A stretch of DNA of 64,000 bases from the NCBI RefSeq assembly GCF_001194135.2, contig NC_068984.1:145475638-145539637 (forward strand), read 5' to 3'. The translations under genes were made by a program, and so were the position numbers. The notes below the pieces were generated by a model. It ran no database searches, was not told the DNA's origin, and saw only the letters and a list, made by a program, of their open reading frames with translations. The first letter of the stretch is position 1. Each line of letters starts with the position of its first letter. The stretch comes from Octopus bimaculoides. Lineage: Eukaryota. Positions 4,361-59,732 of this stretch are shown piece by piece.

Positions 4361-5128
4361 TACACACATAAATATATATACATTTATATATATGCATAAG
4401 TATATATACATACATATATATTATACACACACACAAACGCACACACATATATAAGTAGACACATTTCCATTGAAATGTTGCTATATATTGTCATATATTG
4501 AGTTGAAGTGTACAACCATGACCAACACCACCAAACCCCCCACCACCATCACAGTCGAAACAAGACTATACTGGAGTCTTTAAGTGGTCGTTTGACCTGC
4601 AAGAAATAGCCTAGACCTGCCCTCGAGTCATACCCCAAGTGCCAGCTTAGAGAAGGACTCACTGCATCATATGCACTAGGTTCCCTGCATGAATGAAAAA
4701 GATAGGGTGGTCACAAGCGGAGAGCCGTTTATCATAGGCTGGGGCTTATAAAAAAAAAAGACATTAATAACGAAGCAACCACTATCATCACAATGACACC
4801 AACCAGTGTTAGTAACATCATCATCATCATCATCATCACAGACAATACCGTCTTTAAAAATACTATTGTCACCACCACCACCCCAACCCTTACCATCCAC
4901 TTATTGCCCCTGAAACCATTACCACAGCAAAAGAAAAAATTTAAAAAACTAAAAAGATCACCATCATCATTACAACCAACCACAACAATCAACCACCGCC
5001 ACCTTCGTGTGGGTGAGAGGACACAGTGTAGGATTCAATACAATGTGGGGAAGAGGACATTGTGAAAGAGGGATGTAATGTGATAGTCCTTGTCGCGTGT
5101 GTGCGTATGAGAGAGAAAGAAAGAGTAC

Positions 5129-5166
<38 letters not shown>

Positions 5167-5414
5167 ATGTATGTGTGTGGATGCATGTGTGTAAGTGTAT
5201 GAAGAAAACATGGTTGACTAAATTATCGCTGACAGAGACAGGAACAGTCACAAAAAGACAAAGAGAGAGAGAGAGGGAGACAGAGAGGGAGAGTAAGAAA
5301 TTAGAGACAGACAGACAGACAGGCAAGTTGGCAGAGAGAGAGAGAGAGAGATCAAACAGAACTAGTAAAACATGTACTTATTGGCTTGCATTTCACACTA
5401 AAGTGTGTGTGTGT

Positions 5415-5453
<39 letters not shown>

Positions 5454-5927
5454 GTGCCTCTAGTGGCCCGGGAGGGGGGGGTTATGACTGTATCTCCATC
5501 TCTCCCCCCCTCCCTCACACCTTGCAGTGTTGTATTGTTGTTGTAGTTGTTGTTATTTAGATCAAACAATGGCAAAGTGGTGGTGGTGGTAAAATTAATT
5601 AATAATGTGGAACAAGAATAAGGGCCAAGTTAAGTGATGATGATGATGGTGGTGGTGGTAATGATGATGACTAAAACAATATCAAGGCCAATGACCTAAT
5701 GAACAGGCCTCCACGTCATTTCCCCTGACCTCTAAGACATAGCAGCTAAATCTTTCTCAAATTTCATACACATTGAATCAGAAATAAGGATTGTCGAGGC
5801 TAGAATCTCTTTAATACTTTTCTTCCTAGGGAGGGTCTACTTGATTAGGACCTAATTTGGTGCCTAAAGTGTATCAAGGCCTTCCATGAGAATCTGTCAA
5901 AGATCTTGACTTCTTTTCTTTTTCACA

Positions 5928-24126: not shown

Positions 24127-24232
24127 GAACCTGAAGATGTGTTGGTAGAATTATAAATATGATGATTGCATATATTTATTTATATGTGTATATGTATGTA
24201 TATGTTATAATCTTCCAAAGCACATGTAGTTC
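24127..24232 (+). ncRNA. Type I hammerhead ribozyme motif (degenerate) in the Penelope pseudo-LTR
   Basis: GAAC-CTGAAGA-T-[long stem II]-(C/G)AAA/G-CACATG-TA-GTTC. Stem I is GAAC/GTTC and the cleavage site is UA. GAAA is mutated here (CAAAG) and in the inverted copy (TGAAG). Confidence 0.6.
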
Positions 24233-24505
24233 CTTCATAATTGATAATTTTAATTTTAACTTAAGTAGGAGATAATTAAGGAAGTATATTTCATACCCTG
24301 TTGGTGTTCTCGTTATATCATTTCATGATGTGCAAATAAATACCACGAGTTTACCTTCAGATATACTCATTAGGTTATTTTTTTGTATTATCTGAAACAG
24401 AATACTCGCATATCTATTAATCCCAAAAACTGAATTATATATGCAACATATGGTATAATTATAAACAGCAAATTTTAACCATTTCTCCGCAGACTGAAAA
24501 ATGAT

Positions 24506-24556
24506 GAACAACCTCAATCGATTTTCAAACCTTATTGAGTTCTTATCAGAGGCGTC
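24506..24556 (-). ncRNA. Minimal type I hammerhead motif, copy A (degenerate)
   Basis: Minus strand GACGCCT-CTGATAA-GAAC-tcaataag-GTTT-GAAA-ATCGAT-TG-AGGTTGTTC. Stem II is paired; core G8 is mutated and position 17 is G. Confidence 0.65.
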
Positions 24557-25553
24557 TACATCATTCTGACAATCTCCAGAGAAACAATCAGTCAAACAGT
24601 TTATATACTCAACAAATGCATCAGTTACTCTATGAAGGAGTCCCTAATAAGCATACGGAAAATGCTTAACACTCTATAAATACCAGCAGCCTGTCAACGG
24701 GGATCTTAGTCCACACAGTATCAAGGTATGATATAATATATATGTAACATATGGTATAATATATATATATATATATTTGGAACTCAGCATTATTGAATGT
24801 TCCAAATGCATTTGGATGCCTAATCCCAATGGATCATCTAGGGGAAACACTTCATTGCATTCTATTACAGAGATTTAGTATCTGAAGTCAGACACATGGT
24901 GAAGTAATCCATAAATAACTGCAGTAATTTATACTTATTCTGACAGGTTTTCCGAAAAGGCAAGAATTTGAAAACTTCAAGAGAATGTGAAATAATTATT
25001 CTTAACGGTTGCCTGTAGAATAAGAACCCACATCTGTAAACATGACAGACAGGATGTAGTCTTCTGCTTTTTCTATCCAAGTGGTTTTTAAACCCATTAT
25101 CTACTCACAAGTTATCATGGTTTTATCTACTTCAAGAAGCACTGATAAAAAAATGCAAAATTATTTCAGGCACTGGAGTGCGATAACAAGTTTGCTTCCC
25201 ACCCACATGGTTCAGTCCCACTGCATGGCACCTTGAGCACGTGTCTTCTACTATAGCCCCAGGCCAAGCAAAGCCTTGTGGGTGGATTTAGTAAATGGAA
25301 ACTCAAAGAAGCCCTGCTGAGAATCTCTGGTGAGTTCTTCATTACAATTAGAAGTGCTCCTTACATGTATGAGACATACAAAAACTCATACATTGCTTGG
25401 GTGAGGACTGATTTGAGGTTGGACTTTACAGCTAGATGCTCTCCCTGTTATCAACCTTTAACCCATTTCTCAAGTGATGAGATGTCTTTATTCCACAAGT
25501 CTTTGAACGTCCAGAGTAACAAGCAATGTCAACATCAGCACAAATGAAATACC

Positions 25554-58129: not shown

Positions 58130-58750
58130 ATTTACTTAACAATCCTAACATCAAAGTAAACACATACACACATACACATACATTTATAGATATATATACA
58201 CACACATACACATTCTCGCATACACATACACACATGTACGTACACACATGTACGTACACACATACACATACTCACATACACACATACACATTCAGACATA
58301 CAAGTACACAGACACGTACATACATACACACATACATATAGACATACACACATATACATACACACACGAATACACACATACACACACATACACGTNNNNN
58401 NNNNNATACACATACACACATGTACGTACACACATGTACGTACACACATACACATACTCACATACACACATACACATTCAGACATACAAGTACACAGACA
58501 CGTACATACATACACACATACATATAGACATACACACATATACATACACACACGAATACACACATACACACACATACACGTGCACATACACACATACATA
58601 TACAGACATACACACTTACACATGCATGTACACACATACACGTACACACATACAGATACACACATACACGTATGTACATAAACGCACACATACACACATG
58701 CATACATACATGCATGCACACATACATACATACATACATACATACATACA
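58130..58750. repeat. Complex (CA/TA)n microsatellite tract
   Basis: Directly visible; contains an N gap at 58396-58405. Confidence 0.9.
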
Positions 58751-58805
58751 CGTAAACCTACGTAGTAGATATACAAATATAGCAAATTTAACTTTTTCCG
58801 AAGAT

Positions 58806-58856
58806 GAACAACTTCAATCGATTTTCGAAACTTATTGCATTCTCATCAGTGACGTC
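58806..58856 (-). ncRNA. Minimal type I hammerhead motif, copy B1
   Basis: Minus strand GACGTCA-CTGATGA-GAAT-gcaataag-TTTC-GAAA-ATCGAT-TG-AAGTTGTTC. CUGAUGA and GAAA are intact and stem II closes with G-C; position 17 is G and stem I is weakened. Confidence 0.7.
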
Positions 58857-58989
58857 TTACATATCTTGACCGATCCCAGATAAACACTCAGCTAATCTCT
58901 TTCTATACACAACAAATCCAGTAGCTTCAGAGAACAGGAGGGACTAATTAGTATATTATAAGTGTTTCACCCTTTATTTGATAGCTGCC

Positions 58990-59203
58990 AAGGCAGCGAG
59001 CTGGCAGAGTCGTTAGCACGCAGGACGAAATGCTTAGTGATAGTTCGCCCGTCGCTACGTTCTGAGTTCAAATTCCGCCGAGGTCGACTTTGCCTTTCAT
59101 CCTTTCGAGGTTGATAAAATAAATACCAGTGAAACACTGATATAATCGACTAGTCCCCCCCTCCCCACAAAATTTCAGGCCTTGTGCCTATAGCAGAAAG
59201 GAT
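58990..59203 (+). mobile_element. SINE (family B, MetaSINE-like central domain) inserted in the retrozyme-like repeat
   Basis: AAGGCAGCGAGCTGGCAGAGTCGTTAGC...GAGTTCAAATTCCGCCGAGGTCGACTTTGCCTTTCATCCTTTCGAGGTTGATAAAATAAATACCAG. The same family occurs at about 10405-10600, 15180-15380, 35290-35500(-), 45770-45940(-), 53730-53940, 57990-58130(-) and 62868-63070. The MetaSINE assignment is from memory and needs a library search. Confidence 0.85.
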
Positions 59204-59273
59204 TAAATACCAGCAGCCAAGGAGATCTCAACTCACACAACATCAAGGTATGGTTATGCTGTGAAAAACTAAT

Positions 59274-59327
59274 GAACGGCCTTAATCGATTTTCGGACCT
59301 TATCGAATTTTCATCAGAGGTGTCTGC
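59274..59327 (-). ncRNA. Minimal type I hammerhead motif, copy B2
   Basis: Minus strand GACACCT-CTGATGA-AAAT-tcgataag-GTCC-GAAA-ATCGAT-TA-AGGCCGTTC. Core and UA cleavage site are intact, stem I is CCT/AGG, stem II is weakened. Confidence 0.7.
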
Positions 59328-59396
59328 ATCACTTGACCAAAGTGTGTACTCGCTCTATCCTCACTCAACAGTAACTGTCGTCATCGTAACTGTTGT

Positions 59397-59441
<45 letters not shown>

Positions 59442-59732
59442 CGACGACGATGACGATGATGATGGTGATATGATGACAGAAAAATAATGTTCATATTTTA
59501 AAAATTAAACAGGAAGAAAATGGAAGAAAATAATCTAACAAATAAAGCGAAAAAATCTCTTGCAAAGAATGAAATGTATTTTATTGGTTAAAAGTTAAAT
59601 AAAACGGATTCATATCAGGGCCTTGCCCAGATGCTGCTATAAAACGATATCAATAGTTTTATTGCTGGTGCTGTATACTAAAAAGTATTATGTTAAGAGG
59701 AAGTGCAGAAAGTGTGCTAAAATACATACGTA

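What the first reader, a model, noticed from the sequence alone, without database searches (positions are those of the whole stretch)
58780..59350. Head-to-tail hammerhead ribozyme repeat: candidate cephalopod retrozyme (self-cleaving, circRNA-forming element)
Seen: two minus-strand hammerhead cores (CTGATGA...GAAA) 468 bp apart. Removing the ~226-bp SINE-containing insertion (58978-59203) leaves a period of about 240 nt, with no ORF. With the copy at 24.5 kb, the three copies give the consensus GACGCCT-CUGAUGA-GAAC-loop8-GUUC-GAAA-AUCGAU-UA-AGGC.GUUC. This has paired stems I and II and a 2-bp stem III inside the 8-nt palindrome AAUCGAUU. Established: minimal type I hammerheads with palindromic stem III occur in Penelope-like elements and metazoan non-LTR retrozymes, are thought to cleave as dimers, and retrozyme arrays yield small circular RNAs. 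Inference: this is a non-autonomous retrozyme-like family whose transcript was cut into ~240-nt monomers. Each copy here has at least one defect, so these copies may be dead. Whether the family is already described in Octopus is unknown to me.
Basis: partly seen in the sequence, partly recalled or inferred. Interest (0 to 1): 0.85.

Follow-up and report, generated by a model that had tools for sequence, protein, structure and literature searches.

The report
Decayed hammerhead-ribozyme retrozyme repeat copies
The window holds three dead copies of a roughly 300-base, non-coding mobile repeat whose family consensus encodes a complete self-cleaving hammerhead ribozyme; this is a new member of the known animal "retrozyme" class, not a new kind of element.

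Summary
Two minus-strand hammerhead-like motifs lie 468 bp apart at 58.8 and 59.3 kb, split by a SINE (58990-59205). A third lies at 24.5 kb. Each window copy is defective, and none matches any Rfam hammerhead model.

Genomic reads laid at 80% identity show a family with a depth of about 330-410 in a sample of one run. The majority letters restore a canonical type I hammerhead: CUGAUGA, helix II GAACC/GGUUC with loop CAAUAA, GAAA, a 2-bp helix III inside the palindrome AAUCGAUU, and cleavage site UA.

The family unit is 301-303 bp, not 240, and head-to-tail junctions are common. It has 37.5% G+C and no ORF. The same consensus letters appear in contigs from five other organism labels.

The consensus monomer RNA folds into a rod (z about -4) that is 22 kcal/mol more stable than the opposite strand. 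Two ribozyme domains co-fold into the classical double hammerhead.

No reverse-transcriptase ORF adjoins either locus. RNA-seq of the source organism shows only background-level reads. No pile-up of read ends marks the cleavage site, and junction reads are not enriched.

Verdict: dead relics of a non-LTR retrozyme-like family, probably mobilised by Penelope-like elements. Self-cleavage and circular RNA remain untested.

The parts
59262..59336 (-). Hammerhead domain A, in a 5'-truncated upstream unit. Core CUGAUGA is at 59317-59311, GAAA at 59294-59291, and the site UA|A at 59283|59282. Defects: helix II reads AAAUU...GGUCC and does not pair; G10.1 is A; helix I has A for G at 59321.
   Evidence: 84% identity to the consensus; fold z +0.8. 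Family reads restore G10.1, helix II and helix I.
59206..59261 (-). Junction between unit A and unit B, plus the first ~50 nt of unit B (CATACCTTGAT...GGCTGCTGGTATTTAATC). About 60 nt of unit A's tail and linker are missing here.
   Evidence: 59204-59252 is 74% identical to unit positions 31-84. Family read depth is about 0 over 59223-59268.
58990..59205 (+). Later insertion of a very abundant SINE into unit B. Other copies carry a (TTA)n tail.
   Evidence: depth up to ~165,000, a joint 59205->58990 that goes back 216, and a loose end TTATTATTA behind 59205; diverged target duplication of ~16-17 bp; no tRNA called.
58765..58989 (-). Rest of unit B with hammerhead domain B (58868-58794). Core CUGAUGA is at 58849-58843 and the site UG|A at 58815|58814. 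The 3' tail reads GGAAAAAGTTAAATTTGCTATATTTG. Defects: G17, helix II reduced to 3 bp, and U2.1 changed to A.
   Evidence: 75% identity to the consensus; z +1.0; family reads give A17 in 92%, plus GAACC/GGUUC.
24436..24765 (-). Copy C, 1.09 units and 94.8% identical to the family consensus. Hammerhead domain is 24568-24494. The core is mutated to CUGAUAA (24549-24543) and the site reads UG|A at 24515|24514. The ends 24436-24464 and 24737-24765 repeat each other, because the insert is longer than one unit.
59397..59476 (.). (TGA)27 microsatellite about 60 bp from the 5' side of the 59-kb insertion (homology to the family starts at 59336).
58160..58754 (.). (ACAT/AC)n microsatellite abutting the 3' side of the 59-kb insertion.
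   Evidence: The Rfam miRNA-like matches here, all below gathering score, are repeat artefacts.

Best explanation
The three motifs are mutated copies of a non-autonomous, non-coding short retroelement of about 301 nt. I file it as a non-LTR retrozyme-like family.

Shown here:
- The family consensus encodes a complete type I hammerhead.
- Units occur head to tail.
- The ribozyme-polarity RNA is predicted to fold into a long rod. In that rod helix I is extended to about 40 bp by pairing of the 3' tail with the region upstream of the ribozyme.
- Helix III alone is unstable, and two ribozyme domains co-fold into a double hammerhead.

Inferred mechanism, by analogy with described retrozymes:
- A transcript spanning two or more units lets neighbouring ribozymes pair through the palindrome AAUCGAUU.
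- It is then cut after UA into unit-length RNAs. A host RNA ligase may circularise these.
- The RNA is copied back into DNA by the reverse transcriptase and endonuclease of Penelope-like elements.
- This would account for inserts slightly longer than one unit, partial tandems and microsatellite-associated sites.

The copies in this window can no longer cleave.
For: Family size and consensus:
- DNA reads at 80% likeness reach a depth of about 330-410 over the unit core, from 1.93 Gb of one run.
- Majority letters restore CUGAUGA: 24544 T>C in 81-84% of reads.
- They restore the UA site: 24515 in 85-87% and 58815 in 92%.
- They restore GAACC-CAAUAA-GGUUC: 24538, 58830, 58838/9, 59296, 59304, 59306 and 59310.
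- The same majority letters appear in contigs of organism labels C, D, F and G at all 17 diagnostic places. Organism E has them at most of those listed.

Tandem arrangement:
- At 24760, 102 reads from three runs run on into the tail of another unit, with agreement about 0.8.
- Joints that go back 292-293 occur in DNA reads and contigs.

No coding capacity and no attached ORF:
- The unit has 37.5% G+C and stops in every frame.
- Within +-3 kb of either locus every frame carries 34-78 stops per 1000 codons, and Pfam found nothing relevant in ORFs.
- The remaining unit edges continue into heterogeneous sequence, with agreement about 0.5.

RNA structure:
- The consensus monomer folds at -88.5 kcal/mol against -68.9 +- 4.8 for shuffles. 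That is z -4.1 to -4.3, with 0 of 300 shuffles as stable.
- The opposite polarity gives -66.1, z -2.5. The structure contains 15 G.U pairs.
- The actual copy C gives -75.3 (z -2.5) against -43.7 (z +0.7) for its opposite strand.
- The helix III hairpin scores 0.0 kcal/mol, whereas the 8-bp intermolecular duplex scores -6.1. The co-fold minimum of two domains is the double hammerhead, with the cores left open.

Match to the literature:
- The architecture fits published descriptions of canonical metazoan type I hammerheads and of non-LTR retrozymes: monomers of about 300 bp, G+C below 45%, and arrays from dimers to multimers.
- Partial tandems, an extension at one end and microsatellite targets are Penelope-type insertion traits.
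- Retrozymes have recently been argued to be non-autonomous Penelope derivatives.
Against: - No Rfam hammerhead hit for any window copy, even at E<=10. The consensus itself could not be submitted to Rfam.
- No catalytic test was possible.
- In RNA-seq of the source organism the RNA/DNA depth ratio is about 0.17, lower than the 0.4 seen for the SINE.
- Both strands are read, and no read-end pile-up occurs at 24514/24515.
- No joint reached the listing threshold in RNA. Only 5 reads cross a unit junction in one run, a smaller share of the local depth than in DNA.
- The best-expressed copies carry private changes that kill the core, G12>A or A13>C.
- Stem covariation cannot be shown: with 4 sequences the observed values do not exceed the shuffles.
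- Variation among family reads is dominated by transitions and CpG decay.
- 13-16% of reads share the G8>A and A17>G defects of copy C. That could mean dead-ribozyme copies also spread, or it could be reference bias.
- No autonomous partner element was identified.
Confidence: 0.75

Rival explanations
1. The units are ordinary pseudo-LTRs, or 5'-truncated 3' ends, of an autonomous Penelope-like element. They would then be debris of full-length elements rather than a separate non-autonomous family.
For: Penelope-like elements carry hammerheads in their pseudo-LTRs. They insert as partial tandems with a short extension at one end, often in microsatellites. Both window loci show such traits. Penelope-like elements are reported to be numerous in octopus genomes, if that is the source.
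Against: - Unit-to-unit junctions recur at a 301-303 bp period with nothing between the units.
- At the unit's 5' edge the only consistent continuation is another unit's tail. The rest is heterogeneous.
- There is no ORF within 3 kb of either locus, and no YxDD-bearing open stretch anywhere in the window.
- The ribozyme has the canonical architecture: helix III of 2 bp with a 4-nt palindromic loop, helix II of 5 bp and a long helix I. Most metazoan Penelope elements instead have a minimal form with no helix III, a 7-8 bp helix II and a 4-5 bp helix I.
Confidence: 0.12
2. This is a dispersed or tandem satellite-like repeat whose hammerhead-like sequence has no RNA-level role today. It would spread by DNA-level duplication, with no self-cleavage or circular RNA.
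For: RNA representation in the source organism is at background level, with no cleavage-site ends. Dead-core variants are frequent, at 13-16%. No covariation could be shown.
Against: - A complete 11-nt core plus three correctly placed helices in the consensus is not expected by chance.
- The same consensus letters appear under several organism labels.
- The predicted rod is strongly strand-specific, by 22-32 kcal/mol, and depends on G.U pairs, which points to selection on the RNA.
- Solitary inserts just over one unit long, with heterogeneous flanks, indicate transposition rather than array expansion.
Confidence: 0.08
3. The motifs are a chance resemblance to a hammerhead in AT-rich repeat sequence.
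For: No Rfam hit. Each copy breaks at least one rule.
Against: The pattern occurred in 0 of 100 shuffles. The family majority repairs every defect. The pairing register is specific: 84.5% of cells pair, against 50% or less when the partners are slid.
Confidence: 0.01

Closest known systems
Metazoan non-LTR retrozymes (coral Acropora, mussel Mytilus, axolotl; Cervera & de la Pena 2020, PMC7229834)
   Same: A type I hammerhead sits inside a short AT-rich non-coding repeat of about 300 bp. Copies occur as monomers, dimers and multimers. The predicted RNA is compact and highly paired. A short helix III calls for a dimeric ribozyme, as in the axolotl.
   Different: Abundant linear or circular RNA, which defines those families experimentally, was not seen in the source organism. 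Only about 10% or more of units have an upstream neighbour, so most copies are solitary. The window copies are dead.
Schistosoma mansoni Sm-alpha repeat and its Sm1 hammerhead
   Same: The type I layout and a very similar helix II and loop. The Sm1-derived N79 ribozyme reads CUGAUGA-GUCC-CAAAUA-GGAC-GAAA. This family reads CUGAUGA-GAACC-CAAUAA-GGUUC-GAAA. The 5' strand of helix I also begins GAUG.A in both.
   Different: There is no sequence homology outside the ribozyme. The cleavage triplet here is UUA rather than GUC. The N79 helix III is engineered, so it cannot be compared.
Pseudo-LTR hammerheads of Penelope-like elements (Cervera & de la Pena 2014, PMC4209133; Craig et al. 2021, PMC8557442)
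   Same: Insertion anatomy matches: partial tandem, a short extension at one end, 5' truncation and microsatellite neighbourhood. These ribozymes are also thought to act as dimers.
   Different: No RT/endonuclease ORF is attached. The ribozyme is not the minimal Penelope variant.
Newt/salamander satellite 2 hammerhead transcripts
   Same: A tandem repeat of about 330 bp whose hammerhead has an unstable helix III and is active only as a dimer (Forster et al. 1988, as cited; axolotl data).
   Different: Those are large arrays with abundant transcripts. Here copies are mostly dispersed, and no abundant RNA was seen in the source organism.
Plant LTR retrozymes (PMC4918200)
   Same: A non-autonomous retroelement with hammerheads that is processed through circular RNA.
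   Different: Plant elements have type III ribozymes inside true LTRs, a PBS and PPT, G+C above 55% and a size of 600-1000 nt. None of these applies here.

Membership tests
Hammerhead ribozyme, type I | Conserved core C3-U-G-A-N-G-A9 and G12-A-A14 | tested here: met
   Met by the family consensus and by copies A and B. Copy C has CUGAUAA, a G8>A change.
Hammerhead ribozyme, type I | Cleavage site U16.1-H17, where H is not G, preceded by an A15.1-U16.1 pair | tested here: met
   The consensus is UA, in 85-92% of family reads. Copy A has UA. Copies B and C have UG, so they do not meet it.
Hammerhead ribozyme, type I | Helices I and II paired, G10.1-C11.1 present, helix I open-ended | tested here: met
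   In the consensus, helix II is 5 bp GAACC/GGUUC. Helix I is 4+3+7 bp with a bulged U and a UA bulge. Copy A's helix II is unpaired and copy B's is 3 bp.
Hammerhead ribozyme, type I | Match to a curated covariance model (Rfam hammerhead families) | tested here: not met
   No hit at gathering score in the window, and none at E<=10 on any of the three copies. The consensus sequence cannot be submitted to this tool.
Hammerhead ribozyme, type I | Compensatory changes that preserve the helices | tested here: inconclusive
   Four sequences do not exceed the shuffles. The variable stem sites in family reads are mostly G-C<->G.U transitions, and their linkage is unknown.
Hammerhead ribozyme, type I | Site-specific self-cleavage | not testable with these tools
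   Needs in vitro transcription. No read-end pile-up occurs at the site in three RNA-seq runs, but the depth is only about 50-90 and most copies are dead.
Non-LTR retrozyme | Type I hammerhead inside a short (150-450 bp) head-to-tail repeat | tested here: met
   The period is 301-303 bp, and 102 junction reads were found in three DNA runs.
Non-LTR retrozyme | Non-coding, low G+C (below 45-50%), no LTR/PBS/PPT | tested here: met
   G+C is 37.5%, with stops in all frames of a trimer. PBS and PPT were not looked for separately.
Non-LTR retrozyme | Expressed as abundant unit-length linear and circular RNA | tested here: inconclusive
   The source organism shows background-level reads, on both strands, with no enrichment of junction reads. 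The libraries may be poly(A)-selected. One run of a sister organism label shows word depths of 10^5-10^6 on parts of the unit, but whether it is RNA or DNA is only guessed.
Non-LTR retrozyme | Stable, highly self-paired monomer RNA | tested here: met
   Prediction only: z -4.1 to -4.3, and strand-specific.
Penelope-like element pseudo-LTR | The repeat flanks an RT plus GIY-YIG endonuclease ORF | tested here: not met
   No open frame within 3 kb of either locus, no YxDD open stretch in the window, and no consistent ORF-like continuation of family reads.
Penelope-like element pseudo-LTR | Minimal hammerhead: no helix III, helix II of 7-8 bp, helix I of 4-5 bp | tested here: not met
   Helix III of 2 bp plus a 4-nt loop, helix II of 5 bp and a long helix I, measured against the description.
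Penelope-like element pseudo-LTR | Partial-tandem insertion, short extension at one end, microsatellite target | tested here: met
   The 59-kb locus is a truncated unit plus a full unit, lying between (TGA)n (about 60 bp away) and (ACAT)n (abutting). Copy C is one unit plus 29 nt next to (AT)n. These traits fit mobilisation by Penelope machinery, not membership as a pseudo-LTR.

The most novel reading that the evidence does not exclude
The family may still be active in the clade. In at least one sister species it may produce an extremely abundant, heterogeneous population of ribozyme-bearing unit-length RNAs, possibly circular. One run of organism label E shows word depths of 10^5-6x10^5 on two segments of the unit, about 1000 times those in the source organism. 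If the source is an octopus, this would be a highly expressed retrozyme in cephalopods, which no paper in the searched library describes.
Probability: 0.2. Interest if true: 0.55.

Novelty: new member of a known kind. Interest (0 to 1): 0.4.

Why it matters
Retrozymes are the main genomic home of animal hammerhead ribozymes. They are also a ribozyme-based, splicing-independent route to small circular RNAs.

This work adds a well-defined family: a 301-nt consensus, a dimer-dependent canonical hammerhead, a rod-like RNA and Penelope-type insertion anatomy. The family is shared by several related organism labels.

In the papers searched, no hammerhead or retrozyme has been described for cephalopods. 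If the source is a cephalopod, this extends the known host range.

The consensus gives a concrete construct for cleavage and circularisation tests. It should also improve repeat annotation, which probably files these copies as unknown repeats. The window copies themselves are inert relics with no expected effect on neighbouring genes.

Tried and rejected
- Rfam found no hammerhead, neither at gathering score on the whole window nor at E<=10 on each copy. The miRNA and snoRNA matches listed there are microsatellite or chance hits below gathering score.
- I first read the 24-29 nt direct repeat at the ends of copy C as a target-site duplication. I rejected this because family reads from other loci cover it and the repeat is part of the unit. 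It is terminal redundancy of a 1.09-unit insert.
- About 150 reads break at 24501. They looked like a separate tail-only family or a poly(A)-ended element on the other strand. I rejected this because their loose-end consensus is a diverged hammerhead with an indel in the T-run.
- The 240-nt period is not a family property. Family depth is about 0 across the A-B junction, and only one contig shows a joint that goes back 240.
- Exact-pattern scans of metagenome and viral contig collections for the ribozyme consensus found 0 matches.
- Attempts to identify the organism failed. Two ORF look-ups found nothing. One protein search, on an ORF with a weak otopetrin-like Pfam hit, returned only weak unrelated hits, so that ORF is spurious. 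The library-word filter gave no information on older runs.
I replaced it with stop counts and a motif scan.
- An orthologous empty site for copy C in other species could not be read, because contigs break in the flanking (AT)n. The joints that skip about 552 bases are microsatellite artefacts.
- The covariation test on four sequences has no power.
- Read variants show no A>G excess on the RNA strand that would suggest ADAR editing.

Full report
**1. What is in the sequence**

On the minus strand, CTGATGA-N16-GAAAATCGAT occurs at 59317-59285 (copy A) and 58849-58817 (copy B). The two cores are 468 bp apart. The pattern occurred in none of 100 dinucleotide-preserving shuffles. A third copy (C) lies at 24568-24494.

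Each copy is defective.
- Copy A has an intact core and a UA site. Its helix II does not pair (AAAUU/GGUCC), and G10.1 is A.
- Copy B has G at position 17, a 3-bp helix II, and A for U at position 2.1.
- Copy C has CUGAUAA (G8>A) and G17.

No Rfam family reaches its gathering score in the window. No hammerhead model appears at E<=10 on any copy.

**2. Anatomy of the two loci**

Copy C is a discrete 330-bp block (24436-24765) next to (AT)n.

The 59-kb locus reads as follows in the minus direction.
- A (TCA)n microsatellite, seen as (TGA)27 at 59397-59476.
- About 60 unassigned bases, then a 5'-truncated unit with ribozyme A.
- A junction that lacks about 60 nt.
- A full unit interrupted by a SINE, with ribozyme B and a 3' tail.
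- A 590-bp (TGTA/TG)n tract.

The SINE occupies 58990-59205 on the + strand. It reaches a read depth of about 165,000, other copies carry (TTA)n tails, and it is flanked by a diverged duplication of about 16-17 bp. It entered after the unit did.

**3. The family**

Raw genomic reads from the source organism (label A; names are coded) were laid on copy C at 80% likeness. Depth over the unit core was about 330-410, from 1.93 Gb sampled out of a 128-Gb run.

If the genome is about 2.7 Gb, which I assume and have not checked, that means roughly 500 copies. This is a lower bound. Copies as diverged as A and B (84% and 75% identity to the consensus) are mostly missed. Two loci in one 64-kb window also suggest many more old copies.

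The majority letters repair every defect of the three window copies.
- 24544 T>C (81-84%) gives CUGAUGA.
- 24515 C>T (85-87%) and 58815 C>T (92%) give the UA site.
- 24538, 58830, 58838/9, 59296, 59304, 59306 and 59310 give helix II.

The consensus on the ribozyme strand reads: GAAUGAUG-UA-GAC-GCCU CUGAUGA GAACC CAAUAA GGUUC GAA AA-UCGA-UU A | AGG(U/C)-U-GUU-CAUCAUU.

Sites with intermediate frequencies are mainly CpG decay: 24527, 24553/4, 24519/20 and 24526. The 17 majority changes gave a 301-nt consensus, to which copy C is 94.8% identical.

**4. Unit length and arrangement**

At the 5' edge of the unit (24760), 102 reads from three DNA runs continue into TATAAACAGGGCAAATTTTAGCCATTTCTC. That sequence is the tail of another unit, and agreement is about 0.8. 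Joints that go back 292-293 bases, with 10-11 letters between, appear in reads and contigs. The period is therefore 301-303 bp.

The repeat at both ends of copy C looks like a target duplication. It is instead terminal redundancy of a 1.09-unit insert.

Junction reads amount to about a tenth of the core depth, so most units are solitary or truncated. Other edges continue into heterogeneous sequence (agreement about 0.5) or into a SINE-related palindrome.

It is matched by only one contig.

**5. Not coding, not attached to an ORF**

The unit has 37.5% G+C and 16-18 stops per frame in a trimer. Within 3 kb of either locus every frame has 34-78 stops per 1000 codons. Pfam found nothing relevant in the longer ORFs. 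No open stretch of 70 or more codons in the window contains a YxDD motif.

**6. RNA structure**

The 75-nt consensus ribozyme domain folds with helices I and II as expected (-19.6 kcal/mol, z -2.4). Copies A and B do not (z +0.8 and +1.0).

The whole consensus monomer, cut at the ribozyme site, folds into a rod at -88.5 kcal/mol. Shuffles give -68.9 +- 4.8, so z is -4.1 to -4.3, and none of 300 shuffles is as stable. The tail CAGUCUGCGGAGAAAUGGCUAAA pairs with the region upstream of the ribozyme, which extends helix I to about 40 bp.

The opposite polarity reaches only -66.1 (z -2.5), and the structure has 15 G.U pairs. The real copy C gives -75.3 (z -2.5) against -43.7 (z +0.7) for its opposite strand. 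This strand asymmetry points to constraint on the ribozyme-polarity RNA.

Helix III alone is not stable (0.0 kcal/mol). The palindrome AAUCGAUU forms an 8-bp intermolecular duplex (-6.1). The minimum-energy co-fold of two domains is the classical double hammerhead, with both cores unpaired.

**7. Breadth**

Contigs from runs labelled organisms C, D, F and G carry the family with the same majority letters at all 17 diagnostic places. These include G8 (92-97%) and A17 (91-95%). Organism G also shows the tandem junction. Organism E has it too.

**8. RNA evidence**

In three RNA-seq runs of organism A the unit is read at a depth of about 50-90 over the ribozyme region. The RNA/DNA ratio is about 0.17, against about 0.4 for the SINE, and both strands are read.

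No pile-up of read ends occurs at the cleavage site. No joint reached the listing threshold, and only 5 reads in one run cross a unit junction. That is a smaller share of the local depth than in DNA. The dominant expressed copies carry private changes that kill the core.

This looks like read-through of dead copies, not retrozyme expression. Selection of the libraries for poly(A) RNA cannot be excluded.

One run of organism E, whose RNA status is only guessed, is very different. Word depth reaches 266,000 over 24502-24523, spanning the cleavage site. It reaches 626,000 over 24612-24622. Depth is much lower over the 5' half of the ribozyme and over the tail. No read-laying runs were left to replicate this.

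**9. Comparison with what is known**

Published descriptions define canonical metazoan type I hammerheads as follows. Helix I is about 6 bp, helix II about 4 bp, and helix III is 1-2 bp capped by a 2-4 nt palindromic loop. They are active as dimers and sit in tandem repeats of 150-450 bp.

The minimal Penelope variant lacks helix III. It has a 7-8 bp helix II and a 4-5 bp helix I.

Non-LTR retrozymes are monomers of about 300 bp with G+C below 45%. [quoted passage not shown]

The present family fits the canonical and retrozyme description in every sequence-level feature. Its helix II and loop resemble those of the Schistosoma Sm1-derived N79 ribozyme, GUCC-CAAAUA-GGAC.

Its insertion anatomy matches that described for Penelope-like elements and their non-autonomous derivatives: partial tandem, an extension at one end, 5' truncation and neighbouring microsatellites. 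This agrees with the recent proposal that animal retrozymes are non-autonomous Penelope derivatives.

In the searched library I found no paper that describes hammerheads or retrozymes in cephalopods. Octopus repeat surveys list Penelope-like elements but no ribozymes. I could not verify that the window is from a cephalopod.

**10. Verdict**

Cleavage and circular RNA remain unproven.

It is a new member of a known kind. It is of moderate interest, mainly as a defined test construct and because of the unexplained very high depth in one sister-species run.

Noticed in passing
window 24491-24534 and 24579-24655 (copy C), seen in run X27 of organism label E: Logan contigs of one run of a sister organism label give word depths of 97,000-626,000 on two segments of the unit. 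One segment spans the cleavage site. Runs of organisms A and C give 20-260. The abundant species has the family-consensus letters plus private ones, and it runs on into a diverged 5' half of the ribozyme. Whether the run is RNA is only guessed, so this could be very abundant retrozyme RNA or a large satellite array.
   Followed up: partly
window 58990-59205 (+): A hyper-abundant SINE, with read depth up to ~165,000 in about 1.9 Gb of reads. Other copies have (TTA)n tails. There are SINE-to-SINE tandem joints and common internal deletion variants that skip 62-72 nt between 59097-59107 and 59168-59170. It is also heavily represented in RNA. ARAGORN calls no tRNA in it.
   Followed up: partly
loose ends at window 59095 (SINE) and at 24728, 24733 and 24756 (retrozyme 5' edge): A perfect 28-nt palindrome, GGTTCGTCCATCGATCGATGGACGAACC, is the consensus continuation of 5202 reads that leave the SINE at 59095. 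It also continues dozens of reads that leave the retrozyme unit near its 5' edge. It may be the end of another abundant element or a SINE variant. Like the ribozyme's helix III, it contains ATCGAT.
   Followed up: no
window 58160-58754 and 59397-59476: A long compound (ACAT/AC)n tract with a 186-bp higher-order period, and (TGA)27. They generate long spurious ORFs (58132-58785, 58248-58883). They also give Rfam matches to mir-297, mir-3149 and mir-1277 with E down to 1.7e-07 that stay below gathering score.
   Followed up: yes
window 24164-24204 and 24369-24409: The low-coordinate flank of copy C is itself repetitive. A TATATG-type microsatellite shows word depth near 10^6 in other species. 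Another repeat, with depth 3,700-28,000, ends about 25 bp from the insert. Copy C therefore sits among other repeats.
   Followed up: no
window 24515, 24544 (copy C) and 58815 (copy B): The ribozyme-killing states G17 and A8 of copy C are shared by 13-16% of family reads, and G17 also occurs in copy B. Either a subfamily with a dead ribozyme kept spreading, or this is reference bias. Linkage between the two sites could not be read.
   Followed up: partly
window 5097-5546 (+): A 149-aa ORF with a weak otopetrin-like Pfam match (E 0.007, below cut-off) has no close homologue among 5.8 billion proteins. It is probably not a gene.
   Followed up: yes
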